From the NCBI GenBank assembly GCA_000708835.1, contig DF237096.1, forward strand, positions 108,497 through 172,496: a DNA stretch of 64,000 bases. The letters are read 5' to 3'. This stretch comes from Klebsormidium nitens. Taxonomy: Eukaryota > Plantae > Klebsormidiophyceae. Position 1 is the first letter of the stretch; every line of letters starts with the position of its first letter. A program made the position numbers and the translations under genes. Below the pieces are notes generated by a model. The model searched no databases. It was not told the DNA's origin and was given only the letters and a program-made list of their open reading frames with translations. Shown here one piece after another: positions 12,001-64,000 of the stretch.

Positions 12001-15000
12001 TACCTTCCCGTCAAGCAGGACGGGCTGATCGACCTAGAGCTTCTCAAAAACACCATCACCCCCGAGACGGTGCTCGTGTCGGTGATGGCGGTCAACAACG
12101 AGATCGGGGTGGTGCAGCCGCTGGCAGAGATCGGGCAGATCTGCAGGGAAAGGAAGGTCTTTTTCCATACGGACGCAGCGCAGGTGAGGGGGTCTGAAAG
12201 TACACAATTGCTGACAGCCATTCAGCAACTTCTCCTGAGCCTCTCAGCCCTACTAAGTCTGACCCCCGGCATCATGACGTTATTTGGAAGGTCAGAAATG
12301 TTAGGTTGATTACGCGCTGTCTGTCCTAGGTGAAACGGCTTTTTGGCGTTTCTCGCAGTGGAGACTCAAGTTTGGCTCTTGATTTGAGCGGCCGCTTTGT
12401 CGGCAGTGCGGAAGTCGGAGTACTTATGAATCGTCGAGGTGGCTGCTAAGATTGCCGGTGCGAAAATAGAAGCTAAAGCGGCTGTGTACACCACCGAACT
12501 CAAGGAAATGTAACGCAAGGAGTGCTGCTACGTGAGCGAATTTTGACTACCTCGTCGAGAAGCAAGTTTAGGTTTCTTCCAGTTGATGGTTTACGAGATT
12601 TGAGGAGACTCAATCTGATTCTTCGCCGTAAAGTAAGGTTTCCTGCCTTCCCTCCTGTTGTACGATCCTGAAGTCTACATTGTCCTCGTGTCTGATTAGA
12701 GCTCTACTGCGCCGACTTTCTTGGTTATCCAAACCTTGAAAGCCGGGACACAATAGGACCCATAGATTTGCTCTTTGCGCACGCCAGCACGTTCTTCCCG
12801 CCACCTGATACTCACTCCCTACACATGCTCCTACGGATACCAACTTCGTCTGTTCTTGGCAGGCCGCAGGGAAGATTCCGGTAGACGTGGACACGCACAT
12901 TTCCTCAAAACCTGCATGTCTTCTCCAGACGTCTAATACTCTTTGAACATTCAGATCCGCTAACCAACCTGTGTTTGGCAGGCCGCGGGGAAGATCCCGG
13001 TCGACGTGGACGCTATGAAGATCGACCTCATGTCGCTGAGCGGCCACAAGCTGTACGGCCCCAAGGGCGTCGGCGCGCTCTACATCCGGCGCCGCCCGCG
13101 CGTGCGCATCGAGGCGCAGATGAGCGGGGGCGGCCAGGAGCGGGGCCTGCGCAGCGGCACCATTCCGACGCCGCTCGTCGTGGGCTTCGGGGCGGCGTGC
13201 AGTATAGCACAGGAGGTGGGTCGCTTGGAATATGCTGAAGGTTGTTTTTGGGAACCTGCTGTTTTTAATGGCGCTTCCAAGGTCCTCACTGTGGCTTTGG
13301 CGCCCTATACAGGACAGCACTGGTGGTAGGCTGGTTGAGGTCCTGTTGCTTTAGTCATTGCTTCCCAGCAGCTCTCGAGTAGTGATTGCTTTCCCGCAGC
13401 TCTTGTGGCGTAGCCTCCGGGCGGCTCCCAAACTCATGCAGAAGCTGCGTTGCATGTTGTGTCGTTGGAACTAAGATTTGCGCCGTTGCTACTTTGCGTC
13501 CGCCGTGGACTCAAAGCCATTCCCGTGGACTGATATTCTGTTAAGTTGCGTCCCGAAACCGTTGTGAAATGCTTCTCACCGTTGACAGCAACGGTTCCTG
13601 CAGTGTCAAGCGATTGCTAGGCCTGCGACTCTGAGTATCTTGACCGCGTATACTGAACGAATTACAAGGAACTCGTTCGATGTGCTGCTTGATGCCCTGT
13701 ACCCACTGGTGTCAACCCCTTCCGCTTCGAAGCGCTCATCTGCTCTTGACACTGCAGGAGATGGCCCGTGACCGTGCCCACGTGGACCGGCTGTCGCAGC
13801 GGCTGCTGGACGGAATCCGGTCGAAGCTCGAGGGCGTCGTTCTGAACGGATCAGAGGAGCATCGCTACCCGGGCAACGTCAACCTGTCTTTTGCGTACGT
13901 AGAAGGTGAGCCGCGACCAGTTTTCAAGCTCTTTGCAGCTTGCAAGCATTTGGAGCGAAGTAATCTTAAGAGGGCACTCTCTGTTGGACTGGCTGGAGCG
14001 TAATTCTTATAAGGGGGCACTTTGTTGGATTGCCTGAAGGGAAATCTGCTGGGGAGATTCCTTATCAGCAACTCTACTGCAGTCACGCATGCTGAAATGG
14101 AACAACGGTGTGTTCGTGTTCCGATTGACCGAGTCAGTCGGGCTGAATACGAGTACTTACTGGGAGCTGCAAGTTTAACAATGTGTGCGAAGTTTGCGGA
14201 GTTGATTGTTTCGAGTCACTTCCGACGAGCTTGTTAAGTGGAGGTGGTGTCCTAACTCCCGTTGGCCGACGTCGTCCGAATGTCGAGTGGGAGTCCAATC
14301 TGCCCGCCCTTGGTTCCTCGAAAAGTCCCCAGCGAGTAGAAGAGCATTATTAAGCGGCATCGATCATCGCACGAGAGGCTGCGCTTCTGCTCTTGTTTCT
14401 CGTCTTCGTTTTATTGTACAAGAGTACGTTGAGGGTATTGAGCCTTTATCGTCCTTTAGTCACTCAAATCAGAGGCTGTGCAAAGCACGATACGCCGGAA
14501 GTCTGCTCCGTCTCACAGTGCTGGGCGAGAAGCCCCGGATGCACTTTAAAGAACTGACTGGTTAGTTCAACGTATTCGAAGATTGTTTCGGCAGGGACAG
14601 CGTGGACCTGCAGATGAACTCCACTTTCGTCGTTTTTGTGTTCGTATGTCTACATGATTTTCGAAAGCTATCCGCTTCCATAACACTTTGTACTCATCGA
14701 TCATTTTCTTGACCAGGTGAGAGCCTGCTGTGTATGTATACGAAGGTTTCGTATATTGTCTGCTTTCTTCATACCCGTTTATCATATCTATCAGGTGAGA
14801 GCCTGCTGATGGGGCTCAAGGAAGTCGCCGTCTCCAGCGGGAGCGCGTGCACGAGCGCCAGCCTGGAGCCCAGCTACGTCCTCCGGGCGCTCGGGGTCGA
14901 AGAAGACATGGCGCACACGTCTATCCGATTCGGTGTCGGACGGTTCACGACCGAGGAGGAGATCGATCGTGCAGTCGAGCTGACGGTCGCGCAGGTGAAC

Positions 15001-15081
15001 AAGCTGCGGGAGCTGAGCCCGCTCTGGGAGATGGTCCAGGAGGGGATAGACATAAAGAGCATCCAGTGGGCGCAGCACTAG
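9045..15081 (+). CDS. NFS1: Mitochondrial cysteine desulfurase (NifS/IscS), 8 exons
   Basis: Exons 9045-9249, 10222-10388, 10865-10936, 11279-11461, 11986-12183, 12982-13215, 13758-13905 and 14795-15081 splice in phase. Motifs: transit peptide, [34 protein letters not shown]-lysine [10 protein letters not shown], catalytic SSGSACTS, and the C-terminal [12 protein letters not shown]. Confidence 0.97.
10021..10072. repeat. Perfect 26-bp tandem duplication in NFS1 intron 1
   Basis: TTTGCCTGGTTTTCTGTCTACCTCTG occurs twice, head to tail. Confidence 0.9.
11795..11917 (+). pseudogene. Degenerate duplicate of the NFS1 intron 4 acceptor plus the start of exon 5 (pseudo-exon)
   Basis: CTGCAG|GGCTTCGACCTGACGTACCTTTCCATCAAGCAGGACGGTTGA translates [24 protein letters not shown], versus the true exon [25 protein letters not shown] 145 bp downstream. 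Confidence 0.9.
12850..12893 (+). repeat. Duplicate of the NFS1 exon 6 acceptor and first 10 codons
   Basis: TTGGCAG|GCCGCAGGGAAGATTCCGGTAGACGTGGAC versus the true TTGGCAG|GCCGCGGGGAAGATCCCGGTCGACGTGGAC at 12982. Confidence 0.9.
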
Positions 15082-15808
15082 GTGCGGCCGCGTCAGCGTA
15101 GGGCGGGGGAGTCAGGATGCGGTCTGTTCGGAGAGTCGATCAAAATGAACTCTTTGGCATTCCGATCATGGGGACAGACTAGACTCGTTCTTTGTGAACG
15201 CGAGGTGCAAGCGGAGTCCACGGGGGGCTATTGGGCGGGACATACGTTACCATCGCAGCCATTTCGTCTCTTTGAAACGACAGCTCCCATCAAAGGGCAT
15301 GGGGTTTATTGCCATACGTTACCAGTAGGATCACTATTCTGCCAGACACATGGCTCTCGGTCTTTGTTGGAGGCGCGCATCATCGCCCTACTTTCGCACT
15401 GAGTAGTGCACAGTAGGATCATGATGCGTTGCCTTCCAAATCGCAAATCATTGTAGCGCTAAGCTATCAAAGAACGAGTTATTCTGGGGGTCGTTTCAGA
15501 GGCCATTCAGCGACGGTTCAGTTCGTTTGAACCATACCGTTCAAGTTTGAATATCAAACGTTAGGTTGCCATTGAATGCACTCAAGTAATGCCGCGCCGG
15601 CAAGTCTCATGCATCAGAGGCCTTGATTGAGACGGTCTCGTAGTATGCAATCAAGCCTTTGAGCTTGTTGGAGCGGAGATGAACGAAAGCCATTTTCCAA
15701 TGCGCAGTGAGCCATGGGCGGTCGCCTGGTCGTTTATTATCGTGTACTTCATGACCTGGCGTGCATGTGTGCTGACGGTTTTTAAAAACTCATTGAGTTC
15801 GTCTTGAT

Positions 15809-24818: not shown

Positions 24819-25022
24819 AAACCTGCAAAGTTACTCAAGCCGGGAACCTCCAAGTCGGGTGCTGTCGACAAGACTTCATAATCTGCATAGATCCTGTATA
24901 GTAAGTTTCTCGGCTGCGTCAAACCTGCAAAGTTACTCAAGCCGGGAACCTCCAAGTCGGGTGCTGTCGACAAGACTTCATAATCTGCATAGATCCTGTA
25001 TAGTAAGTTTCTCGGCTGCGTC
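24819..25022. repeat. Perfect 102-bp tandem duplication downstream of the hydrolase gene
   Basis: AAACCTGCAAAGTTACTCAAGCCGGG...TTTCTCGGCTGCGTC begins at 24819 and again at 24921. Confidence 0.93.
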
Positions 25023-26368
25023 AATTATATTGGATGAGGAAGTCCTTTCAAAAGCCCCGGGGGCCGGCCAATAACCAGTTCCTTCGATCCGACGGCTCGC
25101 GCTTGATCTCTATAGCTGACAATCAAAATTCTCCATGTCGATGGAGGACTGGCATGTGATGCACTTTGGCATGATGTTGCATGCTCGATACAGGCACGTA
25201 CCGTCCTCACAAGAAGCATCAAGTCAAACATGATGCATGCACCAGAAAAAAGACGATGTGGGCAAATTACTAAACTCAGCATGATATCATGCATAAGTTT
25301 TGACACACGCCAGCTGCAAGTCCATCAGGCCCCAAACTTTGTAGTCGTAGCCGGTGGAGTCGTAATGCATCGAGTCAGCTCATGCGCGTTGATTGAACTG
25401 GCTTCCAAGTTCTTTTCAAAACTTGCAGCCGCGGCGCCTAACAGATGTGCACGCAGACATGTGGCCCAATCCATCACCGATTGCAAATTATGCGCTTGAT
25501 ATCGCACAACGTCGTCAGTGTGCCATCTGAGTTCACGTGTCAAGTCAATTCAACGAACGTACGGTCGAGTCAGCGGACAGCGGCCCGCAGCCCCATACTC
25601 ACCCGCCAACCCTGCTGGCCCGTTCCAACGGCCCACAAGTCGTTCACATGCGCGGCGCACCCGAAGAATCACCCACCGTGGTACTCTGTCTGGTCGGCAG
25701 CCGGCCCCCTGCACTGCTGCTGACGTCAAAATGACGCTGCACTCTTCATCGTAGGTACTCTCGAACGAGTACGGTGCCAGGGGTGTGCTCAACAGATTGA
25801 ATTCACAACTGTAGTATCATACTAAGTATGGCCCGCTGGCTTTAATCTGGACTTGCATGGGCGCAGAAGCTGCCGCGCCGCCCCTCGCGCGAGCAGGACG
25901 GTCACGGCCCGGGTGGGAGGCGGCCGCGGGGCGGCAGGGTTTTGGACGCGGGTCGAAGCGAAAGCGGCAGGAGCGGTAAGCACCTCACATCGTTTTTGCG
26001 CACTCTGCAAAAACCCTTGCGTGTATCATCATCCAGAAAAGCCTTTCCTGCGCTGACCGGATGATGCTGATCAGACCCTGCGCAACTGATTGTTGAACAA
26101 AGCGCTGGGGGATGGGCCGGTACAGGAGCAGCGCTTGCGACTGACGTCAGACACAGGGGTTGGGACGCCAGACAATAGTTTGCGTTCCAATCATCCATGC
26201 AGTGCCTAAGAGAAGTTGGACAAGGTGATAGGATACTCTTCTCGCTAGCTTGGACTCAAGGTCGTCACGGTGGCGATACCCAGCTTCTTTGAGGTTTTTC
26301 GGATCAGACGAGCGTATCTTTCACTGTCAGACCATTTTGCTGGCACTTCAGTCAGAAAGCGCTCAGGA

Positions 26369-28937: not shown

Positions 28938-29702
28938 ATGGCGCTGAAGTTGGAGTTGGGTCAGCTCTCCCTATCCGGATATCGTTCTAGAGATGCCGCT
29001 GTCAAAGCTGATGTGGCTGTGACTCAATTCAGCGACATCCCAAAGGAGCTGCAAGAGAACATCCTACAGAGAGCTTTCAGACTAGACAACAGAACCCTGG
29101 CAAAATGTAAGCGCGTCTGCAAGAGCTGGCTGGATTACTGCCTGACGCTCACCTTTAGCGGTAGCTTCCGTTCGTGCCACCACCCCAGGGATCCTCAAGC
29201 TGACGCAAAGGAGGACGCCTTCTATGCGGGTTACGAGCACCTCCATACTATTGTCCGCCTTCAAACTTCGGATGTCTTCTTGGTTGTTCGCACGCGGGGG
29301 CGCAAGCATCGCGGAGGCTTTTCCATCCACTTCAAAGACAGAGAAGGAAGGCCCTGCTCCTGGACTCACTGGCTCAGCAACCGTTCCAAGTCCGTTTCCT
29401 CAGCAGACTTGGCTGCGAGTATGTCTCTTCCAGAGAGTACTAAGACCGAGCTTTCGTTCGAGGCTTGCGGGATTGAGGTGAACTTTCAGACGATTGGCAA
29501 GAAACATCAGGGGCTTGTCGAATTGATCAATGGGGGATTTCTACCAGATTTGGTGGAGGAAAAGCGTCCATGCGCGGTCTGTGCGCGCGCAGACCGCGGC
29601 TGCTTCCCGTGGGTGCTCGACCAATTCCAGGACAACATCTTGGAGATGGACACGGTTGTGGAATATGCGTATTTCCCTCCGAGAAACTGCTGGCACAAAT
29701 GA
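28938..29702 (+). CDS. F-box protein, tandem paralog 2 (intronless CDS)
   Basis: FSDIPKELQENILQRAF..CKRVCKSWLDYC. It shares CHHPRD, RGRKHRGGFSIHF, GIEVxFQTxGxKHQG and CxVC..WVLDQF with paralog 1. Confidence 0.8.
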   Translation: MALKLELGQLSLSGYRSRDAAVKADVAVTQFSDIPKELQENILQRAFRLDNRTLAKCKRVCKSWLDYCLTLTFSGSFRSCHHPRDPQADAKEDAFYAGYEHLHTIVRLQTSDVFLVVRTRGRKHRGGFSIHFKDREGRPCSWTHWLSNRSKSVSSADLAASMSLPESTKTELSFEACGIEVNFQTIGKKHQGLVELINGGFLPDLVEEKRPCAVCARADRGCFPWVLDQFQDNILEMDTVVEYAYFPPRNCWHK

Positions 29703-31216: not shown

Positions 31217-34200
31217 TCAGCCCCTCTTCTTGCCCCCTCCCGGGGCTACTCTCGCAGCAATCCGCTTCTTCCTCTTGTAGTCGATCGCAAGCGCCGACTT
31301 GCTCGCCAGCCATTCCTGTTCCGCCGTCGCCGAACGAACGAAGCTCAGCCCTAGATCCTCGTCCCCAGGCCCGCTTACTGCAACTGAGCGCGGGGCTGCA
31401 GGGTCTGGCCCAGTGCTAACGTCATCGTGACGTGCCGCCCCGGCAGGCGGATTGCCGGCGCCCACACCGCTGGCGTTCGAAGCGTCGGGAAGCGGGGACC
31501 GCCCGGGGGCCGCATCTGCACCGAATTCCGCATTCGATCCGACATTTTGAACGACAGCGGACGTGTTCACACCGGAAGCCATGTTCAAGGCACCGCTGCG
31601 ACCATCACCGGACGATTTGGGGCCATCGGACGGTCCAGGATCGCCGGCGTCCGAAGCGCCCCCGAGAACCGACGCCAAAGAGAACGTGGGTTTGCCGCCG
31701 CCCACGTACCCAACCAGCGCCCGCCAGTTCGGGTTAACAAAAACCTCTTGCTTAACCGGCACTGCTGCAGGTCCGTCCGAGCGGTCCGTACCCGCGTCCA
31801 AACGGTCCGTACTGGCGTCCGCCACACCCGCTACGTCACTCCCCCGCCGTTGAGCGCGTTTCTCCCGTTTCAGGCGCTTCCGTTCTTCTACAGACAAACC
31901 CGCAGCCGTTTCTTCCGGACTGCCCCCTGTTGCCGCTTCATCCGAACGGCCTGTCACGTTCTGCCCGGTAGCTTTTAACCCAACTCTAACATCTCCCCCC
32001 GGTTTCTGCTCGTTTCTTATGTGGCCGTCTTCGTAAACCTCCTCTGCCGCTTCTCGGTCCTTCCTTTTGCTAGGACCCCGTCTCGACTCCTCACGGGGCA
32101 CTCCTTTCCCGGTTGTCGCGCCCGAGAGCCCCACCTCCAACCCCCCCTCTCTAGGTTCCGGACGCTGCCCGCGCTTCTCTTTCTTCCCACTCGCTTCCAG
32201 CCGCTCCTCCGCTTCTCCGGCGCTCCTCATCCCTCCTCTTTCTTTCCGCTTTGCTTCTCCGCCCTCCCTTTTACCCCCTTCTTCCGCCTCTCCTCTCTTC
32301 CTCTTTCCTTCTTTCTCTCCTTCCCCCCTTCTCCTTTTCTTTTCCGTTTCCGTTCCTTTCGACCCTGGCGTCAGCCGTTGCAGCAGGTCCGAGTCCAGGT
32401 ACTTCAGAACCTGCGGACTTAACCGACTCAGGACCTCGCCAACCATTTGCAGCCCGCTGCGAGCACCATTACCGCTCCCCTTTGCAGCGCCACTGTGGGC
32501 TCTTAGTCCCCCTTCCTGTACTAGCCCACTTTTCCGGTTTCCCACCTCTTTCGCTGCCCCCCCTTTCTGTTCCGTAACAGCAGCTTCACCCTCCGAAACG
32601 CCCCTCCGAGGTCTCTTTTCCTCCTTAAGCACGGCCCGCTTTTTCTCCGACTTCTCTTTCCCCGTTTCTCGCGCCTCCTTTCCAATCTCCTCCGGGTTAC
32701 TTGCAGCCGTCGTCGCTCTAGTTACGGTCTTTCTTCCGCTTCCTGTCAACCCGTTCCTAACCCGTTCCTCGCTTTCCATTGGCGCCGCTTCAGTGCGACC
32801 CTCGTTTGCTCCGCTCGCATCCTCGTTGTTTTCCGGGCTTCGCTTCGCAGCCGCGGACGGGTCGAAGCGCGCAATCGGAACGAAGCCCGACGGCCGCTTG
32901 GCCTTCTGAACTGCCTCCTCGCTGCAAATGCAGGTATGGTATAAGAGCGGCTCGTGACAGGAGGCAAAGTTCCCCAGCATTGATTGACAGGTTGGCAATC
33001 TGCCCCTGTTTTTGATGACCCCAACCCCTGAGAACGACATACGAGCAAAGACCGTGAAAGCAAGTGTCAGAATATGGTCCAGAAACTCGTTCAGAAGCTT
33101 CCGTAGAAGTGAAAGATGCTATCGGATGTAAGCGACTGCGAACTTGATATCAAATTTTCCAGACTCCGCTCTGCCATATCCACCTGCGGTTTGAAAACGG
33201 TCGTTGAAATAACTCTGGGCATGGAACAGCAATGCTTTTTCAGCAGCAAGTCAAGGCGTCGAAGAGCGTTCTTTGAGAGGCACGTGTGTATGTACTCGTC
33301 ATTCAAAAACTTGACGCCCAGTGAAACGATACACGCACAAACACTCGAGGAAATAAAAGGGAACACTTTAAAGAAGCGGGAACTGTTCTGTAAAGCAACG
33401 CAAAGAAGCCCGGCTTCAAAGACAACGTGTATGCACTTGATGTAAGCATGCTGCAAGACGACCAAAACTTTCGGCCACATCCATGAAGACGCATCTGAAG
33501 CATGAAAACACCGAGGAAGACCGGAAACAGCAAAGAAGCGCTATGTCAAGTGTGTCAACAATTAGCTTTATACGCACCTGAAGAAGCGCGCGTCGTCCGG
33601 AAACATGGCGCCCAAGATGCCCAGCTGCTTCCGCCGCTCCTCCGCCAGCTGCCGCGCAATCTCCTCTTCGTCCGCCGTCCGTTCCGCCGCCGTTCCGTCC
33701 GCTCCAGCAGATTCCGGCGGAACCCCAGCCGTGGCCGCTTCCTCCTCCAGATCCTCCGCCGGCGCTGTTTCGAAGTCCGCATCGGCGTCGTCCGAAACTC
33801 TTACGGGCCGTTGCAACTTAAGAGCGCTTTTCAGAAGAAGTTTCTCTCGACCAGTATCGTCGTCCAAACCCCCTCTCGCCTTGTCAAATTCCTTCCCGTC
33901 GTCATCCGACTCTTCTTTACTCATCCGGCCATCTTCCTCCGAGTCCAAAGCCCTTCCCTCATCGTCGAATGCCGCATCTGCCCCACCGGAATCCCGTCCG
34001 TCGGACTCCCCTGCTCCGTCGCCGGAATTCCGTCCCTCTTCTTCCGAAACCTCTCCTTGCCACTCCCGCCCTTCCCCTTCCGATACCTCCTTTTCCACGT
34101 CCGTAAAGGACCCCGACAGCTCTTCTTCGCTTCCAAACGAATCCCCGTCACTCTCGTTACCATCTTCCAAACCCTCACCATCAATCGCCCCTCCCGAATC

Positions 34201-36797
34201 TTCCCCGCCAGTCTCCTCTGCTCCATCCCCCACCTCTTCGCCGCCGAAATCGTCCTCTGACTCACCCTCAACCCCGTCAGCACCGTCAATGACGTCCTCA
34301 GCTTCTTCCATGACGTCACCTTCCGAATCCACCTCCTCCCCCCATTCCCTCCACTCCGAGCGTTCCTCCAGCGGGCCACCCTCTAGTTCGTCGTCACCTG
34401 CTGCTGCGACATCATTCAGACCTTCACCCAGAACCCCCGCTCCTAGTTCCTCAGCCCTTGTACTTTCTTCGTTTACCCCTGCTTTCCGAGCCCCATTCAC
34501 ACCCCCGCCGGCCGCCTCTCCTTTCGCAACCTCCTGCCCCTGCTTACTCTCGTACAAATCGAACCCCTCCGACCCTTCGTTTGCGTCCGACTCGCCTTCT
34601 CCGGACGCTTGCTCAAACTCGCCCGTTTCCGGACCGTCCAAACTCTCCTCTTCGTCCAAAGCCCCCGCTGCCTTCTGCATCAGCCGCTCCCAATCACTCA
34701 ACGCCGCCACTTCGGTCTTTTTCGCAGCTTGCGATTCTGCTGGAGCCGACCCGTTGGCCCCCTGCTTGAAACCATCCTTTTTGCCTCCACGCAGTTCCAC
34801 TTTTTCCAACTTCCCCCCAACAAGCCGGCTTTCCTTCCGCCCATCAGTCCCTCTAACCGTTACCGAGTCCCCAGGCGCCTTTCCCCGTGCCCCAAAATCA
34901 TTTAAGCCGCCTGCCTCCTTAGTCCCGCTAGCCGTTCCCGGCTGCCCAGGCGACTTACCCTGGGGCCCAAAACCCTCTAAGCCGCCTGCGTCCTTGGTCC
35001 CTCTAGCCGTTCCTGGATTCCCTGGCGTTTTTCCCAGGGCCTCAAAACCCTCTAAGCCTCCCACCTCCTCGTCAATGAAGTCGTCGTCCTCCTGGCCCGC
35101 CGCCGCCTTCTGCATCAGCTTCTCCCACGCGGTTAGCTCCCTAACCCTGCCCTTAACCCCGTCGCCAGGTTCTGCCCCCTCCGCCTCACGCCCCGAGCCT
35201 TCCGTCCCCTCATCTTCACTGCGCCCCTCCGAATCTTCGCTCCTCTCTTCTGCATCTGGAGACTCGTCCTCTGCCGAGGGCTGGTGTGCTTTCTCTTTCC
35301 CATCCTCTGACCGCTCTCCGGTTTGGCTAACCCCATTTCCACCGAGAGGCCTCGTTTCGATGGCTCTTGTCGAGGTGACGGCCTTAGTTGCAGGCGGCAT
35401 TGCTGCAGACAGGGCCCCTGTCCCTCCCATGCCCTCCAGTTCCCACAGCGACTTCTCAGGCACGTTCCGGAAGCTTTTCTTGATCTTGGCGCCCCCGGCC
35501 GCGGGCATCACCTTCGTCTGTGGAATGAAAAAGCGGATCACAATAACGAAACAGAAAGCAGGAGCACAAGTTCGAACCGTGGGAAAGACAAGGACCTGGA
35601 AACGACATGGATCTTCGGCGTTGCTACTTCGGAGTGGAGCTGGAAATGTTGGGCATTCTGAACCCCATTCGTACCTCAACTCTAGAGGCATGAGAGGGTT
35701 GACTGCTGGCAAACCCAATCGAAACCTCATGCACAAGTTTTTGACAGCTGTTTGGTCTGAAAACAGCTTGCATAGACAGCAAAGCTCGTGTAAGAAGTCG
35801 GATCCTGAAAAGAAGCAAAGATTGTGTTCGCAGCCATACCCTCTTTTCGAACTCCCAGGATCCCCACTTGAGCCTCAACGGCTCAAATATGGGCTTCCCC
35901 TTAGGATCCAACAGCTCCGCTTTTGTTGGCTCCGCCCCCTGCTTGTCAATCTCTGCCCCCCCCTTATCAATCTCTGACCCCAGCTTATCAGCTTCGCTCT
36001 GCGGTTCGTTTTGGGAGGCCCACTCGGCCTTCAGGCGATCGAGGAACGAGGCGCGGGCCTTTTCCACACGGAGCCTACCGCCGCGCCACTTGGTGCCATT
36101 GTACTGGACAGAAAAAACCTCGTTTTAGAATCATGACGTCAGTGTTACGCTTGATATCATGAGCCCAGTTGTAAAGCTCGGGAACTCTCCTTGATGGCGT
36201 GAACGATCAGTCCAACAGAGACAGAATAGTACTACTTCAGGTTGGTACACCTTCTGGTCTTTGCAGCGCAGCGACTTATCCAGAAAACAGTGATTTGGCA
36301 TTATTTATTGTCAAGCAGGACCAGTATCACTTGTGCATCACAGTCCCTACTGCTTCCATCGTTCATCGGGTCCCACTGCGATGCCATCACGTATATCAAC
36401 TCGTATTCTACAAAACATTCACCAGCACGACAGCCACCGGGAGAAGCGAATGCAGAAACAACTCCGAACCTCTCCACTCATCTCCTCAACCAGAATCGAA
36501 ACCCGCACCACTCACCACTGCAAAGCACTTGCTCAGGCTGGCCTCGCTGACCGGCTCCAGGTCAACGTAACCAAACCCGCGGCAGGTCCCCGCATCCTCC
36601 TTCTGGGGCACAATCTCCGACCCAACCACTTTCCCGAATGGCTGAAACCGCGCCTGCAGTTCCTCGGGTGTGACGTCAGCAGGGAGGCCCCCCACAAACA
36701 AGCGGATGCGTCCAACGGCGGTGGCTCCACTCGGGTGGGGGCCGGTAGGCTGGGTGGGAGTGGGAGGGGCGGAGGGGGAGAGCGCTGCTGACGTCAT
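31217..36797 (-). CDS. ROS3: Nucleolar RRM protein, ROS3 (plant) / NOL8-Nop8 family, about 1400 aa, 4 exons
   Basis: Exons 36797-36516, 36103-35840, 35517-33578 and 32921-31217. The N-terminal RRM is RLFVGGL..CRGFGYVDL..LSKCFAVYNGTKWRGGRLRVEKARASFLDRLKAEW, followed by long acidic/basic low-complexity regions and a C-terminal FVRSATAEQEW..DYKRKKR motif. Confidence 0.8.
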
Positions 36798-41500: not shown

Positions 41501-44500
41501 GACACGGGAAATCTACAAAATCTACTGTTGGCGCTGCAGGGCTATCGCGGGAGGCTTCAATCCGAAGATTCTTGACGTGACGGACGATACGGGAACGACT
41601 GTCGCTGCGGCGCTGCTGGAAGCGGGATTGGCAACGGGGCTCGGCAAGTTGCCGGAACAGATCGCGGAGCTGGCGTTTAAGCCCTCAGAAGTTGCAGGTG
41701 TGCTTCAAAAGGAGAGAGACACCGGCACAGGATTCTAGAATGTTGCAATCAGGAACGTAAAGGTTTATGTAGGCAAACGACTTGACTGCACCAGATTGTC
41801 AAACAGGCGAACATGTGCGTTCTCGTTCTTCGTTTGGGCAAAGAAGAGGGTCTTTGCTGCTGACGAAAAACACATGTCGATACGCTACCCTTGGCACCGC
41901 ACATAATGCATCATTGGGTGGTTAAGCTTGCGTTCTACGAAGTCTACGAACCAGCAGGCAATTCCTTGAAGGATTCTGGTGGCCTTGTCGACAATATCTT
42001 GGAAGTCCGGGGCCGGACTGCCCATTCGGATGGCGCTCTTCTCCAACCGCTTGTTTAACCTTTGCTGCCTTTACCATGATGTCACCTTCCGATAACGTCA
42101 CTGCTCGCGTCACCGCCACGTGGCAACCGGCTTTTGCTTATTGAATGCAGAATTGCCTGCTGACCGGAAAAGCCTCTGACGTCAGTCGACTGGCTGAAAA
42201 AAGGCGAGCAGTCCGCCTCAGGAACTCGGCTGACGTCGCTGCTGATGTGTGCAGGCTACGTGGAGGTCCACATCGAGCAAGGGCCCGTTTTGGAACGGAA
42301 GGGCGTCGCTTTGGGTGTCGTTCCGACCATTTGCGGGCAGACGCGGCTGACCGTGACAGTGCAGGGGGCGCAGGCAAGTGCTTGGATCTTGGTTTTCTTG
42401 TTTTTAACGAACTCGGGTTGACACTTTTTTAAGTTTGGGCAGGGTAAAAACGCGGAATGCCGGACCTGTTCTCGGCATAGCTCACTCTGCGTTTGCGGAA
42501 ACCAGAGGCTTTTGTTTCAACCCCCGAAAGTGAAGCACAGGTGTGAGATTGAACCTGTAGAAGTTTCGCGCTTCTTCACGCTTATTCCATCTTGAACTGT
42601 TCCTTTGTGCCTGTTGCTTTTTAAGACATTGCTCGAAAGTCTGGCTTAAACGTGGCAGTGCGGCTTGCAGGGCCACGCGGGGACGGTGCCTATGGCGCTG
42701 CGCAAGGATGCGATGGCGGCCGCAGCGGAGGTGTATGTAACGATCGAGAAGATATGCGGAGGGGGGAGGTGAGGGGACTTTTGTAGTCCTTAAATTCAGT
42801 GTCCTGTACTTGCACAGTGTCGGTTCCGACAGAGGTATATGTAGCGTCGAGAAGTCTGCGGAGGGGGGAGGTGAGGGCACTTTTACATCTCTTGGTTCGA
42901 GTGTGCTCTGCTTGCGTAATGTCGGCCGCGGCAGAGGTGAACGTGACGACCGAGAGAATCTGCGAAAGGGGAGGGTAAGGGACTTTTTCATTTCTCGGTT
43001 CCAGTGTCTTGTGCTTGCGTTGTGTCGGCAGTGGCAGAAGTGAATGTAACAGGTAAGACAAATGCAGAGGGGAAAGCTGAGTGGACTTGTTGTGTGCTTT
43101 GTTTGCTGTCTATCGCGTTGTGTCCTATTCAGTGAGATAGGTAGTCCATAGACCCCCTTCTACTGGACCGGCTGGGGAAGAGATCACACCAGCGTGGCAG
43201 GTTAACCAACAGGTTATGAACGTTGTCTCGAGTCTTTGGCAGGGTTCAAAAGCGGGTTACAAGTACCATGCTGGCCTGAATTGAGTCTAGGACTCGACAA
43301 AGTGTGGAGATTGAAGCTGTTGGGGACTTTTAGAAACGAAGTACGCAGGCCGTTCCGCTAGAGAAGACTGAACGGATGCTGACGTCTGCAGATACGGCCG
43401 CCCTGAGGAGGCGAGCGGGCGACCCGTCTGGCAGGGAGGTACCGGCCTGGTGGGTACCGTGGGTGACGTCAGGGTGTGGCCGGGGGCTTCGAACGTCATC
43501 CCGGGCCGGGTAAGTTTGAGGTCGCTTACTTAGACATCTTTAGTGCACTTACATGGATGTCTGTTCTGCAGATCGCGGCCGCCACTGAATTTCAGACAGA
43601 CTTTTCCGCTTGCCGTTTGGGTATTAGACGACCGATGCGGATGCCGGAAGAACGGAAGGGATTCAGCACTTTGCACAAATGCAACTTTCTCACTTGCAAG
43701 CCTGCCTTCGTGACTGTAAGCTGAATGATTCCAGAGGAGTTTCGATCTAACGCCTTTTGTCGTAGCCCTGTTCTTAGATTACTCAGTCTCAACAACATAT
43801 CTCTTTTGCTCAAGCTCTACAAAGACGTTTTTGCTCTCGCTTTCCCAGGTGATTTTTTCGGTGGACATCCGCGCGCCAATGGACGACCTTCGAGAGACGG
43901 CCGTCAAAGACGTCACGGAGGCGATTTATACCATCTGCATCCGACGGGGCGTGAAGTGCGAGGTCAAACGCAAGGTACGTACCGCGCTACGTACCAAAAA
44001 GTGTCGCGCTGCAGCTCGCGACAAAAGTTGTCTTGAGCATCTTTAAAATTGTCTCTTGTCCACATTACAATGCTTCGTTTAAATAGCGTTTAACCTGCGG
44101 ATTAGGAATGCCTCTGCCGTGCAAAGAGTGCCCTATTGGAAAGAACAGAGATGCTACTCGTTTTGACACCTGTCTTTAGAGCGTCGGAAGCATTGCACAT
44201 ATTTCAAGTCTTTTTGAGAAGACTCTAGTTCGATCATGAACGGCTACTTCGCGTGTGCCTCGAGACTGTGCCTGTAGCACAGAACGAAAAGCTGCTTGAG
44301 CTGATGACGTCACTCTTCTGCAGCACGACGCCATGGCGACGCAGTGCGCGCCGGCTTATGTGAGCAAGCTGCAAAGCGCGGCCAGCCGTGCGATCGATAT
44401 CATCGGAGGGACGACCGGCATCTCGGGCTTGGGGCCCGGGGACGTGCCGATTGTCGTCAGCGGAGCGGGGCATGACGCCATGGCCATGGCAAAGCTGACG

Positions 44501-59904: not shown

Positions 59905-60097
59905 NNNNNNNNNNNNNNNNNNNNNNNNNNNNNNNNNNNNNNNNNNNNNNNNNNNNNNNNNNNNNNNNNNNNNNNNNNNNNNNNNNNNNNNNNNNNNNNN
60001 NNNNNNNNNNNNNNNNNNNNNNNNNNNNNNNNNNNNNNNNNNNNNNNNNNNNNNNNNNNNNNNNNNNNNNNNNNNNNNNNNNNNNNNNNNNNNNNNN
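59905..60097. other. Assembly gap (N run)
   Basis: Run of Ns. Confidence 1.
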
Positions 60098-61127
60098 GAG
60101 CAAGGAGTTCCTCGTGGGAAAGCCACCGCATCTTCAGAAGGTACGGACTGCAGCAGCACCTTTCTCACACGGAGAAGGCAGCCGTGCGTTTGGGGGGAAG
60201 CACCACCGCTTCCCGACGTGCCTTGGCGTAGGCTGATTGGCAGCCTGCAGGGCAGCAGTTTGGCATCATTGGATGCGCGGTTTGGCGCCTTAGAGTTCAG
60301 ATCTGAGGCTTGTTTCAGCAGACTGTGAGAGCACCACAAGAGGCGGCCTGCTTTGTTTGGCCTCTTGGCAGTAACAGGGCTGCCTAGGGCTGATTTGCGG
60401 CGTCATTCTTGGCGTGTAGACGTTGTTTCTGCGGGTTCTGCCTAGGATTTCTGGTTCCTAGGGCTGGTTGCTGTCGGGCGCTGCCTTGTTTAGCGCACAG
60501 GGACTGTTTGATCGCATTTTGCGCAGGGTTTCCAGCAGGGTTTTTCCCTCAGGGCTGATCTGCTGTTAGGCGCCTTTTCATGCGCGCCTGGAGACTGATT
60601 TAGAGGGAGTTGCGCCGTATTTTGCCGCGCTTCTTGCAGTTGACAGCAGCCTGATTCAGATCTGGCCCCTCAGCAATTGCAGCGTCCAGCTTAGCACGTT
60701 TGGGAGCGTTTTTGAGAAGGGTTTTCCGCCTCAGTGCTGGTTGCTGCTAAGCACACCTTTTCTTGGTGGCAGCGGACTGTTTTGGCGCACGTTGCGCAGC
60801 GTTTGAGTGCATATTCTGCTGCCGTCAGCAGTGCCCGTCAGATCTGATTCTTTTGAGACCTGCATCATTGCCTTTGAGCATTTTGGGCAGGGTTTCGGCA
60901 GTCAGGACTGCCTTGCTGGTTTACGTGTCTTCAGCGTTTTAGCAGGGACAGCAGGTCTGATCCTGTGCCAGCGCGTCGTTCCTGTGATCGTCTTTCTTAC
61001 ACAGGGACTGCAGCCTACTTTGGAGCGGCAGCGCCGCTGAGTGTCAGGACTTACACATCCTGTACTGACGTGCTCTGCATTCTTGCGCACTAATATTTTG
61101 TGAGACATCCGCTGAAAATGGCAGGAC

Positions 61128-61330
61128 ATGGCGAACAACGAGGAGCGCGCCCCTGCAACCCCCGTTGAGGACGACGCTGACGACAACTTCAGCGACCTTA
61201 ACGTGGACGAGGAAGAAGAAAACCCTCAAGATCCTGCAGCTACAGGGCAGCGCCAGCGCAATCGCCGCAATCGCCATCGCCGCCGTGGTCGACGCAACAA
61301 CCACGGTCAGGGCAACAACAACCAGCAGGG
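61128..61330 (+). CDS. Putative Gag N-terminus (acidic, then Arg-rich), interrupted by a gap
   Basis: MANNEERAPATPVEDDADDNFSDLNVDEEEE..RQRNRRNRHRRRGRRNNH lies just upstream of the gap that precedes the protease ORF. Confidence 0.55.
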
Positions 61331-61350
61331 NNNNNNNNNNNNNNNNNNNN
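61331..61350. other. Assembly gap (20 N, likely placeholder length)
   Basis: Run of Ns inside the presumed gag. Confidence 1.
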
Positions 61351-61351
61351 G

Positions 61352-63289
61352 ACTTCAGCTGGCGCCACGACAAAGGCGCCGGCAGACAACGACATCTATA
61401 ATCCGGCTAATCCTAGACTCGCTGCTCTGCTGAGCAGCCTGCCGGGTTCGTATTACAGTGATCGATCGCAGGGCACCTACCGGTCCCCGCGCATCGACAA
61501 TACCGGCCCGCGCCCTGCGATGCTTATCAATGGGCAGGTTCTGCACAACCTGGTCCTTGATTGCGGTGCCGACGTCGTTCTGGTTGGCCCGCGCACTGCG
61601 GCCAAACTGAAGCTGACTGCGGACAAAGTCCGCAAGAACGCCATCGAGATCCGCGTTGCTAGCGGTGAGACGGTTCATATGGACGAGACCATCGAGCCGG
61701 TCGACTTTGTTTTGAACCCCGGCACGCCCCACGAAACCACTGTGTGGGCCAAGATCATCATTGTCCGTGGCGACTTGCCCGACACCCTGATCGGGATGAG
61801 CGTCATGGGCCCTCCTGGTATTCGGCCTGACTACTACAAGCAGGTCGTGACGTACTACGTCAACTGGTGGGAGCCACATGCGCGCGAGGCGCACCTCCCC
61901 TGCTTCCTGCCGGTCAACTACGATCGGCCCGGCGCATCCGGAGCCAGCTGTGCGTGCACCCCTCTTGCCTATAGTGCTGCCAGTACGAGCACAGGCGCAA
62001 ACAACACTCCCGAGCTTGCGCCTGGTGCTCCGATTCCGTACAACAAGCTGCTTCAGATTCCGTCACCCAACCTGGATAAGCCGTTCGAAATCGAGAACGC
62101 GCGCTTTCGGATGTGGCATTATGAGAAGCACATGATGCCCGAGATGACCGACCTATACGAGCGCAGCAAGGAACGGCTGGCCGACCCGCCGCCAAACCAG
62201 CGGCCTGTCACCGTGGAGGCGTACCAGCATCTGCGCCCTCTGGACACGAGCATGTTGGACCTGCGCGGGCCCCTGGCCAAGAACGGCCCGGGCCTAGTTG
62301 TTCTGGAGCTCTTCTCCGGTATCATGGCCAGCACTGAGGCACTTGTGCGCACCGGAGTTAAAATCCAGCACGTCTATGCCTGCGAGAACGAGGCTAAGAC
62401 ACGCGCCGTCGCAGAAGAGCGCCTAAGAGTGCTGTCTGCGACTCGGCCTGAGCAGCTGAGCGCCGAAGCGTTTGCCGATTGCCACGCCTTCCTGCCACAG
62501 GATGTCAGGACGATTACGCGCCAGCACATTGAGAACATGCAGAAGCCCGACCTGGTGATCGTCGGCTTCCCCTGCCAGGGGTTTTCGCGCGCATCTGATG
62601 CGCCCAAGGGGCTCAGAGACCCCCGCACGCAGCTTTTCGAAGAGGCGCTGCGTGTGATCCACCTGATATGGCGCATCCACGGCCCGTGTGGGTACCTTTT
62701 CGAAAACGTAGACGCCGCCGACCATCCGAACCGGGACGTTCGGCGCGAATACACCGAGGTCGTTCAGGCCGTCCTCGGCAAGGGCTTCGTTTTTGACGCG
62801 GTCGCTGTGGGCTCCTACGCCCACCGCAACCGGCGCTGGTGGACCAACCTGGTTCCTGGACACCTGGTTGAGGAGATGGCCGACAAGAAGTTCAAGCGTC
62901 GGCCCCCCGGACAGCGCGTGCAGGACATTCTCGAGCTTGGGCACACCGCCAAAGTGGCTCGACACGCGCAGGCTTCTGGCTCAGTGACGGTGAACATCCC
63001 AGGGCAGACCATCAAGGCTTTTGCCACCTTCGTCTCCCTGGCCAACTCGCACGCCTATCGAGTGGGGCAGCAAAGCATGGTACTCGATCGCGCGAATCGC
63101 GAGCAAGAGCCGACCGCCCTGGAGCGCGAGCGCGCCATGGGTTTTATGGAGAACACCACGGCGGCGCCCACTGATCGGATCAAGGAAGCCGATCGCCGCC
63201 GCCTGCTGGGCAGCACCATGGACATGCACGCCCTGACCTTCTTGGTCGGCTGCATCCAGGTTTTCCAGCAGGCCTTCTTTGCCGATTGA
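61352..63289 (+). CDS. Retroelement aspartic protease fused to a C5 cytosine DNA methyltransferase
   Basis: The frame is open from the gap to TGA 63287-63289. Protease: LVLDCGA (Asp at 61559) and LIGMS. DNMT: motif I LELFSGI (62312), II ACENE, III DVRTI, IV GFPCQGFS (Cys at 62573), VI LFENV (62702), VIII HRNRRWW, IX ERERAMGF, X RRLLGST. Confidence 0.95.
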   Translation, partial: TSAGATTKAPADNDIYNPANPRLAALLSSLPGSYYSDRSQGTYRSPRIDNTGPRPAMLINGQVLHNLVLDCGADVVLVGPRTAAKLKLTADKVRKNAIEIRVASGETVHMDETIEPVDFVLNPGTPHETTVWAKIIIVRGDLPDTLIGMSVMGPPGIRPDYYKQVVTYYVNWWEPHAREAHLPCFLPVNYDRPGASGASCACTPLAYSAASTSTGANNTPELAPGAPIPYNKLLQIPSPNLDKPFEIENARFRMWHYEKHMMPEMTDLYERSKERLADPPPNQRPVTVEAYQHLRPLDTSMLDLRGPLAKNGPGLVVLELFSGIMASTEALVRTGVKIQHVYACENEAKTRAVAEERLRVLSATRPEQLSAEAFADCHAFLPQDVRTITRQHIENMQKPDLVIVGFPCQGFSRASDAPKGLRDPRTQLFEEALRVIHLIWRIHGPCGYLFENVDAADHPNRDVRREYTEVVQAVLGKGFVFDAVAVGSYAHRNRRWWTNLVPGHLVEEMADKKFKRRPPGQRVQDILELGHTAKVARHAQASGSVTVNIPGQTIKAFATFVSLANSHAYRVGQQSMVLDRANREQEPTALERERAMGFMENTTAAPTDRIKEADRRRLLGSTMDMHALTFLVGCIQVFQQAFFAD

Positions 63290-64000
63290 CGGCGCGCACG
63301 GCCGACGGTTAGCGAACCGCACGGCCGCCACTCGGCTGCGTGCGTAGCCGATCACTATCACGGTCCTGAGCTTGTACCGCTTACCCATGTGGCCGCCCTG
63401 TCGAGGGCAAAGTTACTGCAGTACCGCCAATTGAGAGAGGTTCCTCACCATGCCGAGTGCTGTCGGGCCGCCATGCACACGTTTGGGGGGGGAGGACCAG
63501 CGCAACAGACCCCAGCAGAGACGACCGCGGGTCCGCCAGAAGGCCCAGGACCGCCAGAAGGCGGGACGACCGGATCAGCTACCGGTCAGAAAGAGCCGTT
63601 CACCTGGCCCCTCGGTGATCATCTTACCGAAGACCAGAAGACTCAGCTGAGAGAGCTGCTGGACGAGCACATTGATATTTTTGCGTTCGACATGAACGGC
63701 ATGGGCCAGATTAGGAACGAGACGTTCCGAATTCCGGTCACAGATGACACTCCAATTTTCCGGCGCCAGTATCGGCTTGCCGAAGCGGAGAAAGAAATCC
63801 TGAAGGAGCAGGTCGAGGAGCGACTTGCGGCCGGATTCATCCGACCGTCGATGTCCCAGTGGGCGTCCCCCGTGACAATGCCCCCGAAGAAAGACGAATT
63901 CGGGAATTGGACCGCGAAGCGTCCCTGCGGTGACTACCGCGCGCTGAACAAAATCAGCGTGACGGATCACTACCAGCTGCCGACCCCTGAGGAGATCTTT
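63290..64000 (+). CDS. Linker plus Ty3/Gypsy reverse transcriptase N-terminus (partial; same frame as PR-DNMT)
   Basis: Hand translation shows no stop from 63290 to 64000 in the PR-DNMT frame. RT-like sequence starts near 63600 and DYRALN is at 63932. It is missing from the ORF track because it has no stop inside the window. Confidence 0.93.

What the first reader, a model, noticed from the sequence alone, without database searches (positions are those of the whole stretch)
63281..63350. Candidate programmed stop-codon readthrough (UGA-CGG plus 3' stem-loop) separating DNMT from RT
Seen in the sequence: the only interruption between PR-DNMT and RT is one in-frame TGA (63287-63289), placed just after DNMT motif X. 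It is followed by CGG. A stem pairs CGCACG-GCCGA (63295-63305) with TCGGC-tg-CGTGCG (63332-63344), can extend by CGGC/GCCG, and encloses a CGGTT-AGCG-AACCG hairpin. GCACGGCCG occurs twice (63296 and 63319), so two alternative folds are possible. Established knowledge: UGA followed by CGG or CUA with a downstream stem-loop is the type II readthrough signal of alphaviruses and plant tobra-, furo- and pecluviruses. Inference: the element has moved its gag/pol recoding point downstream of the methyltransferase. I am not aware of this being described for DNMT-Gypsy elements.
Basis: partly seen in the sequence, partly recalled or inferred. Interest (0 to 1): 0.85.

Follow-up and report, generated by a model that had tools for sequence, protein, structure and literature searches.

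The report
Leaky stop codon in DNMT-carrying retrotransposon
A jumping gene of a Klebsormidium-like green alga, one that carries its own DNA methyltransferase, keeps a single conserved UGA stop between the methyltransferase and the reverse transcriptase, and comparison with relatives indicates that ribosomes sometimes read through it to make the replication enzymes.

Summary
TGA 63287-63289, followed by CGG, is the only interruption between the PR-DNMT frame and the RT frame. It is not a private mutation. All 15 related copies whose DNA I could read (about 40-94% protein identity, including two Klebsormidium nitens scaffolds) have TGA at the same codon, and one decayed copy has CGA. Seven more protein clusters end at the same residue. 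The next base is always C: CGG in 10 copies, CAA or CAG in 5, and UGA-CAA-UUA in two of those. Wherever the downstream part is intact, RT-RNaseH-integrase is in frame after exactly one stop. The best copy has at least 1118 open codons, then TGA, then 867 open codons.

The roughly 100-codon linker after the stop is under purifying selection in that frame only. It carries a conserved peptide motif upstream of any conserved AUG.

A stable stem-loop begins 6-10 nt after the stop in every subclade. In the window's subclade it forms two tandem hairpins with four compensatory pairs.

Best reading: programmed UGA readthrough gives abundant Gag-PR-DNMT and scarce Gag-PR-DNMT-RT-RH-IN. This is inferred from comparison and is untested at the bench. 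The published KnitGypsy-Dnmt3 description does not mention it.

The parts
61098..61302 (+). 5' part of the element, upstream of gag. It is homologous to L003:4238-4433.
   Evidence: blastn gives 74.5% identity. In L003 about 2.7 kb of gag, with a CCHC knuckle, follows this region. In the window that stretch is replaced by the assembly gap.
61331..61350 (.). Assembly gap of 20 N where gag would be expected.
61351..63286 (+). Protease-DNMT part of ORF1. Features: PR active site DCGA at 61559-61570; DNMT motif I at 62306-62320, IV (GFPCQ) at 62564-62578, VI (ENV) at 62699-62710, IX at 63122-63145 and X at 63203-63223.
   Evidence: Translation, Pfam PF00145 and PF13650, motif coordinates. It is 54-80% identical to K. 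nitens and metagenome copies.
63287..63289 (+). In-frame UGA, the proposed leaky stop.
   Evidence: Same codon position in 15 of 16 loci. Seven further protein clusters end at this residue.
63290..63298 (+). 3' context CGG plus the spacer (9 nt) before the first helix.
   Evidence: C at +4 in 15 of 15 TGA loci; CGG in 10 and CAA or CAG in 5. The spacer is 6-10 nt in all subclades.
63299..63327 (+). Hairpin 1. Outer helix 63299-63304 with 63322-63327; inner helix 63306-63310 with 63315-63319; loop AGCG.
   Evidence: 98% of cells paired. Three pairs changed on both sides between the window group and the L007 group (two GC to UA, one UA to GU).
63333..63350 (+). Hairpin 2: 63333-63339 with 63344-63350.
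   Evidence: 97% of cells paired, with one CG to AU compensatory pair and GU to GC changes.
63290..63589 (+). Readthrough linker of 100 codons between the stop and the RT domain. It contains a conserved peptide motif at about 63368-63442.
   Evidence: dN/dS is 0.17-0.34 in frame and 0.6-2.0 out of frame. The motif aligns across subclades. There is no conserved in-frame AUG before it.
63590..64000 (+). N-terminal part of the reverse transcriptase, cut by the window end.
   Evidence: tblastn and alignment to the RT of L003, L004 and L006. dN/dS is 0.03-0.08. In relatives the same frame runs on through RVT_1, RNaseH and integrase.

Best explanation
The element is a KnitGypsy-Dnmt3-type Ty3/Gypsy LTR retrotransposon. 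Its first reading frame encodes Gag-protease-DNMT and ends at a conserved UGA. Most ribosomes terminate there. A minority decode the UGA with a near-cognate tRNA and continue in the same frame through a 100-codon linker into RT-RNaseH-integrase.

Two things would stimulate the leak. One is the 3' context: C at +4, with CGG here and CAA-UUA or CAA-CUA in some relatives. The other is a stable stem-loop module that starts about 7-10 nt downstream, roughly where the front of a ribosome paused on the stop meets the mRNA.

The result is the usual retroelement excess of the Gag side over the Pol side, with the difference that the captured methyltransferase sits on the abundant Gag side.

Shown here: the stop is conserved, the downstream frame is kept, the linker is under coding constraint, the context is conserved, and a stable structure with covariation follows the stop. 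Inferred: that bypass happens by ribosomal readthrough, how efficient it is, and how the polyprotein is processed.
For: Stop conservation. TGA sits at the identical codon in the window and in L001-L009, L088-L092, which are about 40-94% identical at protein level with saturated dS. Protein clusters P0024, P0028, P0032, P0044, P0055, P0057 and P0077 end at the same residue.

Intact exemplars. K. nitens DF238327.1 (L092) has at least 1118 open codons (CCHC gag, PR, DNMT), then TGA, then 867 open codons (RVT_1, RNaseH, integrase). L089 has 420 open codons, TGA, then 914.

Not decay. L092 keeps 19 intact CGA codons, 70 CAA or CAG and 25 TGG, with no other stop.

Frame. RT is in frame 0 with exactly one stop in every copy whose downstream part is intact.

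Context. The +4 base is C in 15 of 15 loci: CGG in 10, CAA or CAG in 5, including UGA-CAA-UUA in two. These match the type II and type I motifs described in PMC3159437.

Linker. dN/dS is 0.17-0.34 in frame and 0.6-2.0 out of frame. A conserved peptide motif lies upstream of any conserved AUG.

Structure. The 55-nt window starting 6 nt after the stop is within the most stable 0-13% of control windows from the same element in 14 of 14 loci, with z from -0.6 to -3.9. The two-hairpin model is 97.8% paired, has 4 pairs changed on both sides, and slid controls reach only 14-51%. Consensus stems with 7-8 nt spacers appear in two other subclades.

Synonymous sites. dS is lower in the first 30 codons after the stop (0.19-0.24) than in the rest of the linker (0.41-0.50) between close copies.
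Against: There is no experimental measurement. The window's fold alone is not significant.

The covariation in the window's subclade rests on essentially one evolutionary contrast (the window group against the L007 group) among five sequences, two of them decayed.

The region is GC-rich and also coding, so some of the conservation is protein-level.

The -1 codon (GAU, AAU, AAC, AGU) lacks the A-rich 5' context common at viral readthrough sites.

The Tca2 precedent shows that an in-frame UGA with a predicted 3' structure need not direct readthrough in a heterologous reporter (PMC2194720).

Gag cannot be seen in the window copy because of an assembly gap.
Confidence: 0.75

Rival explanations
1. 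The stop is real and conserved, but RT-RH-IN is made independently of it. Possible routes are termination-reinitiation, internal ribosome entry, non-AUG initiation, or a separate transcript from an internal promoter in the junction. The structure would then serve that process or some other RNA function.
For: In Tca2 the gag-UGA-pol junction contained a minor promoter and did not direct readthrough in S. cerevisiae reporters. In distant clade B an ATG in good context lies two codons after the stop.
Against: In the window's clade there is no conserved in-frame AUG between the stop and the conserved linker motif. The window, L009, L007, L006, L002 and L008 have none at all before it. Coding constraint starts right after the stop. 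The zero frame is kept across the stop in every intact copy, although linker lengths differ between copies (separations of 300-402 nt measured in six of them). The contexts match known readthrough motifs.
Confidence: 0.13
2. The stop is removed by splicing, as in the K. nitens gene model KFL_000540020 (P0018). That model joins the DNMT C-terminus to the downstream linker.
For: The P0018 model skips the last 14 DNMT residues, the stop and about 60 linker codons.
Against: The skipped DNMT tail and the linker motif are conserved at protein level, with dN/dS well below 1. The published family description says these DNMT copies lack introns. A gene predictor would create such an intron simply to avoid the stop.
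Confidence: 0.05
3. The TGA is damage. It would be either a private nonsense mutation in a dead copy or recurrent CGA-to-TGA deamination at a methylated CpG.
For: One decayed copy (L087) has CGA-CGG at this site. These elements are methylated in K. nitens.
Against: TGA is present in 15 of 16 loci across all subclades. The most intact copies have no other stop despite 11-19 intact CGA codons. TGA is kept where the following codon has changed from CGG to CAA or CAG. The lineages are separated by saturated dS under purifying selection, so the replicating master copies carried the stop.
Confidence: 0.03
4. UGA is decoded as a standard residue, either as selenocysteine or through a variant genetic code.
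For: None beyond the in-frame UGA.
Against: The related clade A uses UAG-CAG-UUA in the equivalent role. No SECIS-like family turned up in the 1.2 kb scanned, although a eukaryotic SECIS would lie in the 3' UTR, which is outside the window.
Confidence: 0.01

Closest known systems
KnitGypsy-Dnmt3 of Klebsormidium nitens (de Mendoza et al. 2018, PMC5890265)
   Same: It is the same family. It is a Gypsy-type element with a Dnmt3-like DNMT between protease and RT. K. nitens scaffolds DF237340.1 and DF238327.1 carry copies with 42-54% protein identity (P0035 and P0042) and the same stop.
   Different: The paper describes the DNMT as part of 'the Pol polyprotein ORF' and does not mention a stop or recoding. 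Here the DNMT ends ORF1 (Gag-PR-DNMT) and is separated from RT by a conserved UGA. The window copy is 80-94% identical to its closest metagenome copies and is not itself in the protein database.
Type II readthrough signals: UGA-CGG or UGA-CUA plus a 3' stem-loop (alphavirus nsP3/nsP4; tobra-, peclu-, furo- and pomovirus replicases; coltivirus VP9); Firth et al. 2011, PMC3159437
   Same: UGA followed by CGG, a stem starting after a spacer of about 7-10 nt, compensatory substitutions, and reduced synonymous change 3' of the stop.
   Different: The host is an LTR retrotransposon of a streptophyte alga, not an RNA virus. The structure is compact: local hairpins within about 65 nt, rather than a long-range stem enclosing a loop of 100-150 nt. 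The -1 codon does not end in A.
Type I readthrough signal: stop-CAR-YYA (tobamovirus type)
   Same: Relatives L008 and L090 have UGA-CAA-UUA and L004 has UGA-CAA-CUA. Clade A has UAG-CAG-UUA.
   Different: The window itself has CGG. The relatives with CAA also keep a 3' stem-loop, which classic type I sites do not need.
Gammaretrovirus (MuLV) gag-pol readthrough
   Same: Gag side and Pol side are in one frame separated by one stop, with an RNA structure about 8 nt downstream.
   Different: MuLV uses UAG-G and a compact pseudoknot, and its stop lies between Gag and protease. Here the signal is UGA-C with stem-loops (a pseudoknot was not examined), and protease plus DNMT lie upstream of the stop.
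Candida albicans Tca2 (Ty1/copia): gag-UGA-pol with a predicted pseudoknot, PMC2194720
   Same: An LTR retrotransposon with an in-frame UGA and a predicted 3' structure.
   Different: In Tca2 the junction alone did not give readthrough in yeast reporters, and the bypass mechanism is unresolved. Here the context matches known plant-virus motifs, and comparative support is broader.

Membership tests
Type II programmed stop-codon readthrough signal | UGA followed by CGG or CUA | tested here: met
   TGA CGG at 63287-63292. CGG follows the stop in 10 of 15 TGA loci and C is at +4 in all 15.
Type II programmed stop-codon readthrough signal | A 3' stem-loop after a spacer of about 8 nt, supported by compensatory changes | tested here: met
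   The spacer is 9 nt in the window and 6-10 nt in other subclades. Four pairs changed on both sides and 97.8% of cells are paired. The window after the stop ranks in the lowest 0-13% of control windows for MFE in 14 of 14 loci. The sample is small and the contrasts few.
Type II programmed stop-codon readthrough signal | Enhanced synonymous-site conservation 3' of the stop | tested here: inconclusive
   dS is 0.19-0.24 in the first 30 codons against 0.41-0.50 in the rest of the linker for the window compared with L003 and L009. Only two close pairs were available and no formal test was run.
Type II programmed stop-codon readthrough signal | Measured readthrough that depends on the context and the structure | not testable with these tools
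   Needs reporter assays or ribosome profiling.
Retroelement Gag/Pol expression by in-frame stop suppression | A single in-frame stop between the upstream structural ORF and RT-RH-IN | tested here: met
   Exactly one stop with RT in frame 0 in the window, L003, L004, L006, L007 and L009 and in L088, L089, L090 and L092. The domains were confirmed by Pfam.
Retroelement Gag/Pol expression by in-frame stop suppression | Gag is in the same ORF upstream of the stop, with no second recoding site | tested here: met
   Met in relatives. P0042/L092 has CCHC, PR and DNMT in one ORF of 1160 aa. L090 and L002 have CCHC plus PR in one open frame. It cannot be seen in the window because of the N gap at 61331-61350.
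Retroelement Gag/Pol expression by in-frame stop suppression | [quoted passage not shown] | tested here: not met
   The stop is UGA, the +4 base is C, and the structures are simple or nested hairpins. A pseudoknot was not searched for.
KnitGypsy-Dnmt3 | Gypsy-type PR / RT / RH / IN with an intronless Dnmt3-like DNMT, and homology to K. nitens copies | tested here: met
   Pfam results. Hits to K. nitens KFL_000540020 and KFL_003910030. P0042 from GCA_000708835.1 is 54% identical over the full 589 aa.
KnitGypsy-Dnmt3 | The DIRS-like terminal repeat arrangement described in the paper | not tested
   The window ends inside RT and the 5' end is interrupted by gaps. No repeats of the element occur within the window.

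The most novel reading that the evidence does not exclude
The UGA module may be an ancient, tuned switch specific to DNMT-bearing Gypsy elements of streptophytes. Under this reading the captured methyltransferase is made at Gag stoichiometry as Gag-PR-DNMT, possibly packaged into particles or released in bulk to methylate cDNA or the host genome, while RT and IN are kept scarce. The family would swap freely between the two readthrough contexts known from plant RNA viruses (UGA-CGG and stop-CAA-UUA) while keeping a 3' stem-loop. That would show these 'viral' signals work as interchangeable parts in a cellular retroelement of the plant lineage. Related clades place the stop elsewhere in the DNMT-RT linker or lack it, so the DNMT:RT ratio would itself be an evolving trait.
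Probability: 0.35. Interest if true: 0.7.

Novelty: new member of a known kind. Interest (0 to 1): 0.55.

Why it matters
It corrects the published gene map of the only known DNMT-carrying Gypsy family. The methyltransferase is the C-terminal domain of the abundant Gag-protease product. It is not part of a continuous Pol polyprotein. That changes expectations about its dosage, and about whether it acts in particles or in the nucleus.

It adds a phylogenetically supported readthrough site with plant-virus-type signals in an LTR retrotransposon of the plant lineage. One paper (PMC5580714) describes many such elements, plant ones in particular, as having a single long ORF that does not allow recoding.

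It gives a compact cassette of about 65 nt, with natural context variants (CGG, CAA-UUA, CAA-CUA, CAG-UUC), for testing how stop context and downstream structure combine in streptophyte translation.

It also explains why the K. nitens annotation splits or splices these genes: KFL_000540020 skips the stop.

Tried and rejected
Single-sequence folding of the window region is not distinguishable from dinucleotide shuffles (z = -1.3), so it cannot carry the claim alone.

I rejected it in favour of two tandem hairpins.

An Rfam scan of 62800-64000 gave only a sub-threshold miRNA-like chance hit.

There is no second copy of the element in the window for internal comparison.

MAFFT alignments across subclades (A4, A5) do not keep the helices in register. 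Cross-subclade structure was therefore judged from per-sequence folds and within-subclade consensus folds, not from one joint covariation count.

Pfam on the 237-aa downstream piece found nothing because the RT domain is cut by the window end. RT identity was established by homology instead.

Gao et al. 2003 (RNA 9:1422), on recoding in LTR retrotransposons, is not held in the library. I therefore could not check whether comparable plant or algal Gypsy cases are listed there.

Pfam on other large ORFs of the window gave no help in identifying the host.

I took no contig for human sequence.
Full report
WHAT IS IN THE WINDOW

The frame that encodes an aspartyl protease (DCGA at 61559-61570) and a C5 cytosine methyltransferase runs to TGA at 63287-63289. 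The methyltransferase motifs are I at 62306, IV GFPCQ at 62564, VI ENV at 62699, IX at 63122 and X at 63203. The next codon is CGG. The same frame then stays open for 237 codons to the window end and encodes the N-terminus of a Gypsy-type reverse transcriptase. The other two frames are full of stops.

On its own, however, the local fold is not better than chance. The z-score is -1.3 for 63287-63400. The window is a draft assembly. Runs of N lie at 59905-60097 and 61331-61350. The second run replaces about 2.7 kb of gag that the closest long relative has. No second copy of the element is in the window.

WHAT FAMILY IT IS

The PR-DNMT protein finds Klebsormidium nitens proteins and many metagenome proteins at 40-80% identity. 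The family is KnitGypsy-Dnmt3, described by de Mendoza et al. 2018 (PMC5890265). [quoted passage not shown] No other paper in the library uses the family name.

IS THE STOP A PRIVATE MUTATION? NO

Many homologous proteins end at exactly the residue where the window ORF ends.

- Stop position. In the close clade (the window, L001-L009 and L088-L092), TGA sits at the identical codon in 15 of 15 loci.
- The exception. L087 has CGA-CGG at that codon and is broken elsewhere.
- Further clusters. Seven more protein clusters end at the same residue.
- Divergence. The subclades are 40-65% identical in protein, and synonymous sites between them are saturated.
- Best copy. K. nitens DF238327.1 (L092) has at least 1118 open codons (CCHC knuckle, PR, DNMT), then TGA, then 867 open codons with RVT_1, RNaseH and integrase to the contig end.
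- Second-best copy. L089 has 420 codons, TGA, then 914 codons.
- No random decay. L092 retains 19 CGA, 70 CAA or CAG and 25 TGG codons with no other stop. This excludes random decay and recurrent CpG deamination as explanations.

FRAME AND CODING CONSTRAINT

Wherever the downstream part is intact, RT is in the zero frame with exactly one intervening stop. This holds even though the linker differs in length between copies; the stop-to-RT separation is 300-402 nt in the six copies where it was measured.

Between the window, L003, L009 and L007, the 100-codon linker has dN/dS of 0.17-0.34 in the zero frame. In the other frames it is 0.6-2.0. For comparison, DNMT gives 0.07-0.36 and RT gives 0.03-0.08.

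A peptide motif about 27-51 residues after the stop aligns across subclades. In the window, L009, L007, L006, L002 and L008 there is no in-frame AUG before it. ATG 63473 is ACG in L003 and AAG in L007. So the sequence right after the stop is translated in frame, and no conserved AUG is available to start that translation. This points to ribosomes arriving through the stop.

STOP CONTEXT

The base after the stop is C in all 15 loci. The following codon is CGG in 10 loci. It is CAA-CUA in L004, CAA-UUA in L008 and L090, CAG-UUC in L089 and CAA-UUC in L092. UGA-CGG is the type II consensus and stop-CAA-UYA the type I consensus of viral readthrough sites (PMC3159437). A family that switches between these two contexts while keeping the stop is hard to explain unless the stop is read through.

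RNA STRUCTURE

For each of 14 loci I folded the 55 nt that start 6 nt after the stop. In every case this window lies within the most stable 0-13% of 28-53 control windows from the same element. The z-scores against dinucleotide shuffles run from -0.6 to -3.9.

In the window's subclade (the window, L003, L009, L007, L001) the conserved fold is two tandem hairpins:
- Hairpin 1: outer helix 63299-63304 with 63322-63327, enclosing 63306-63310 with 63315-63319.
- Hairpin 2: 63333-63339 with 63344-63350.

On the alignment, 97.8% of cells pair. Four pairs changed on both sides (two GC to UA, one UA to GU, one CG to AU). Slid controls pair at only 14-51%.

Other subclades have unrelated sequences but the same layout, an outer helix closing an inner hairpin that starts 6-10 nt after the stop. 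Small changes keep pairing. One position is G-C, A-U or G-U in L006, L088 and L087. Between L089 and L092, C and U alternate opposite G.

Synonymous divergence between close copies is lower in the first 30 codons after the stop than in the rest of the linker.

Caveats: the sequences are few, the window's subclade offers essentially one evolutionary contrast, and the region is GC-rich and coding.

ARCHITECTURE

Gag (CCHC), PR and DNMT share one ORF in P0042/L092. Gag and PR share one open frame in L090 and L002. The UGA is therefore the element's only boundary between the Gag side and the Pol side. The DNMT lies on the abundant Gag side, contrary to the published cartoon.

In more distant DNMT-Gypsy clades from moss-associated metagenomes, the boundary differs:
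- Clade A (L011). This is an intact copy with 1369 open codons, then UAG-CAG-UUA 72 nt before RT, then 1047 open codons.
- Clade B. It has UAA or UAG, then CAA-CCC, then ATG. Most copies are decayed, so it is ambiguous.
- Clade C. It has no stop.

Many database representatives are polyproteins of 1000-3400 aa with an internal DNMT. The boundary is thus labile within the DNMT-RT linker, but the DNMT is always upstream of it. Whether the stop 'moved', or the DNMT was inserted upstream of an older PR|RT boundary, cannot be decided here.

MECHANISM AND RIVALS

The best explanation is programmed UGA readthrough, stimulated by the 3' context and the stem-loop module (confidence 0.75).

- Main rival: independent expression of RT (confidence 0.13). 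Routes would be reinitiation, an internal promoter or an IRES. The Tca2 precedent shows that an in-frame UGA with a predicted structure is not proof of readthrough.
- Splicing, as in gene model KFL_000540020 (0.05). It is unlikely because the skipped segments are under protein-level constraint.
- Decay or deamination (0.03). Largely refuted above.
- Selenocysteine or a variant genetic code (0.01).

COMPARISON AND NOVELTY

The recoding kind (retroelement Gag/Pol readthrough) and the signal kind (type II and type I with a 3' stem) are both known, and the element family is published. New here is that this family uses such a signal, that the signal is conserved with structural covariation, and that it places the DNMT in ORF1. 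I rate this a new member of a known kind, of moderate interest, and directly testable.

SAFETY AND SCOPE

The element is an algal retrotransposon. I took no contig for human sequence.

Noticed in passing
L010-L086 (metagenome loci), P0047-P0187: DNMT-carrying Gypsy-like elements are much more widespread than K. nitens. There are 1087 representative proteins at E<=1e-3. Many are polyproteins of 1000-3400 aa with an internal DNMT, at 30-38% identity, and the sampled DNA loci are largely from moss-associated metagenome contigs. The subclades differ in the DNMT|RT boundary: UAG-CAG-UUA (L010, L011), UAA or UAG then CAA-CCC-ATG (L012, L015, L018, L019, L028, L032, L040, L041), or no stop (L022, L027, L043, L046).
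   Followed up: partly
L011:4994-8134, L006:3794-6046, L002 about 14572-15402: The integrase of these elements ends in a PHD finger (Pfam PF00628 in L011 and in the L006 gene call; a similar C-terminal motif appears in L002). This could be a chromatin-targeting module sitting alongside the DNMT.
   Followed up: partly
L087:6751-6753: One decayed copy has CGA-CGG where all other copies have TGA. Its gene call (P0036) therefore runs from DNMT into RT as a fusion. It still keeps the 3' stem, with a G-U pair.
   Followed up: yes
P0018 (K. nitens KFL_000540020); P0035 (KFL_003910030): The reference K. nitens annotation handles the stop inconsistently. One gene model splices around it and the other ends at it. 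These look like annotation artefacts of an unrecognised recoding site.
   Followed up: partly
window 59905-60097 and 61331-61350: These are assembly gaps of 193 N and 20 N. The second sits where about 2.7 kb of gag is expected by comparison with L003, so the window copy may be complete in the organism but is incomplete in the assembly.
   Followed up: yes
window 61128-61330: A short ORF begins MANNEERAP and is acidic, then Arg/Asn-rich. It is homologous to L003:4238-4433, upstream of gag. It may be the start of Gag or a leader ORF.
   Followed up: no
window 1804-4266 and 31217-35977: Long ORFs (600-820 aa) lie on both strands in regions of strong GC skew (+0.30 and -0.25 to -0.36). They have no Pfam match. 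They look like compositionally biased or repetitive DNA rather than genes. A 75-nt tandem repeat lies at 34846-35069.
   Followed up: partly
window 24819-25024 and 42713-43050: Tandem repeats of 102 nt (2 perfect copies) and 103 nt (3.3 copies, 73% matches).
   Followed up: no
window 28938-29699: An ORF with a weak F-box-like match (E = 3.6e-5, just under the Pfam cut-off). It is probably an exon of a host gene.
   Followed up: no
window about 63368-63442 and the equivalent region in L002, L004, L006, L008, L089, L090, L092: A conserved basic, leucine-rich peptide motif lies in the readthrough linker, about 27-51 residues after the stop. Its function is unknown. It could be a protease site or an RT N-terminal extension.
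   Followed up: partly
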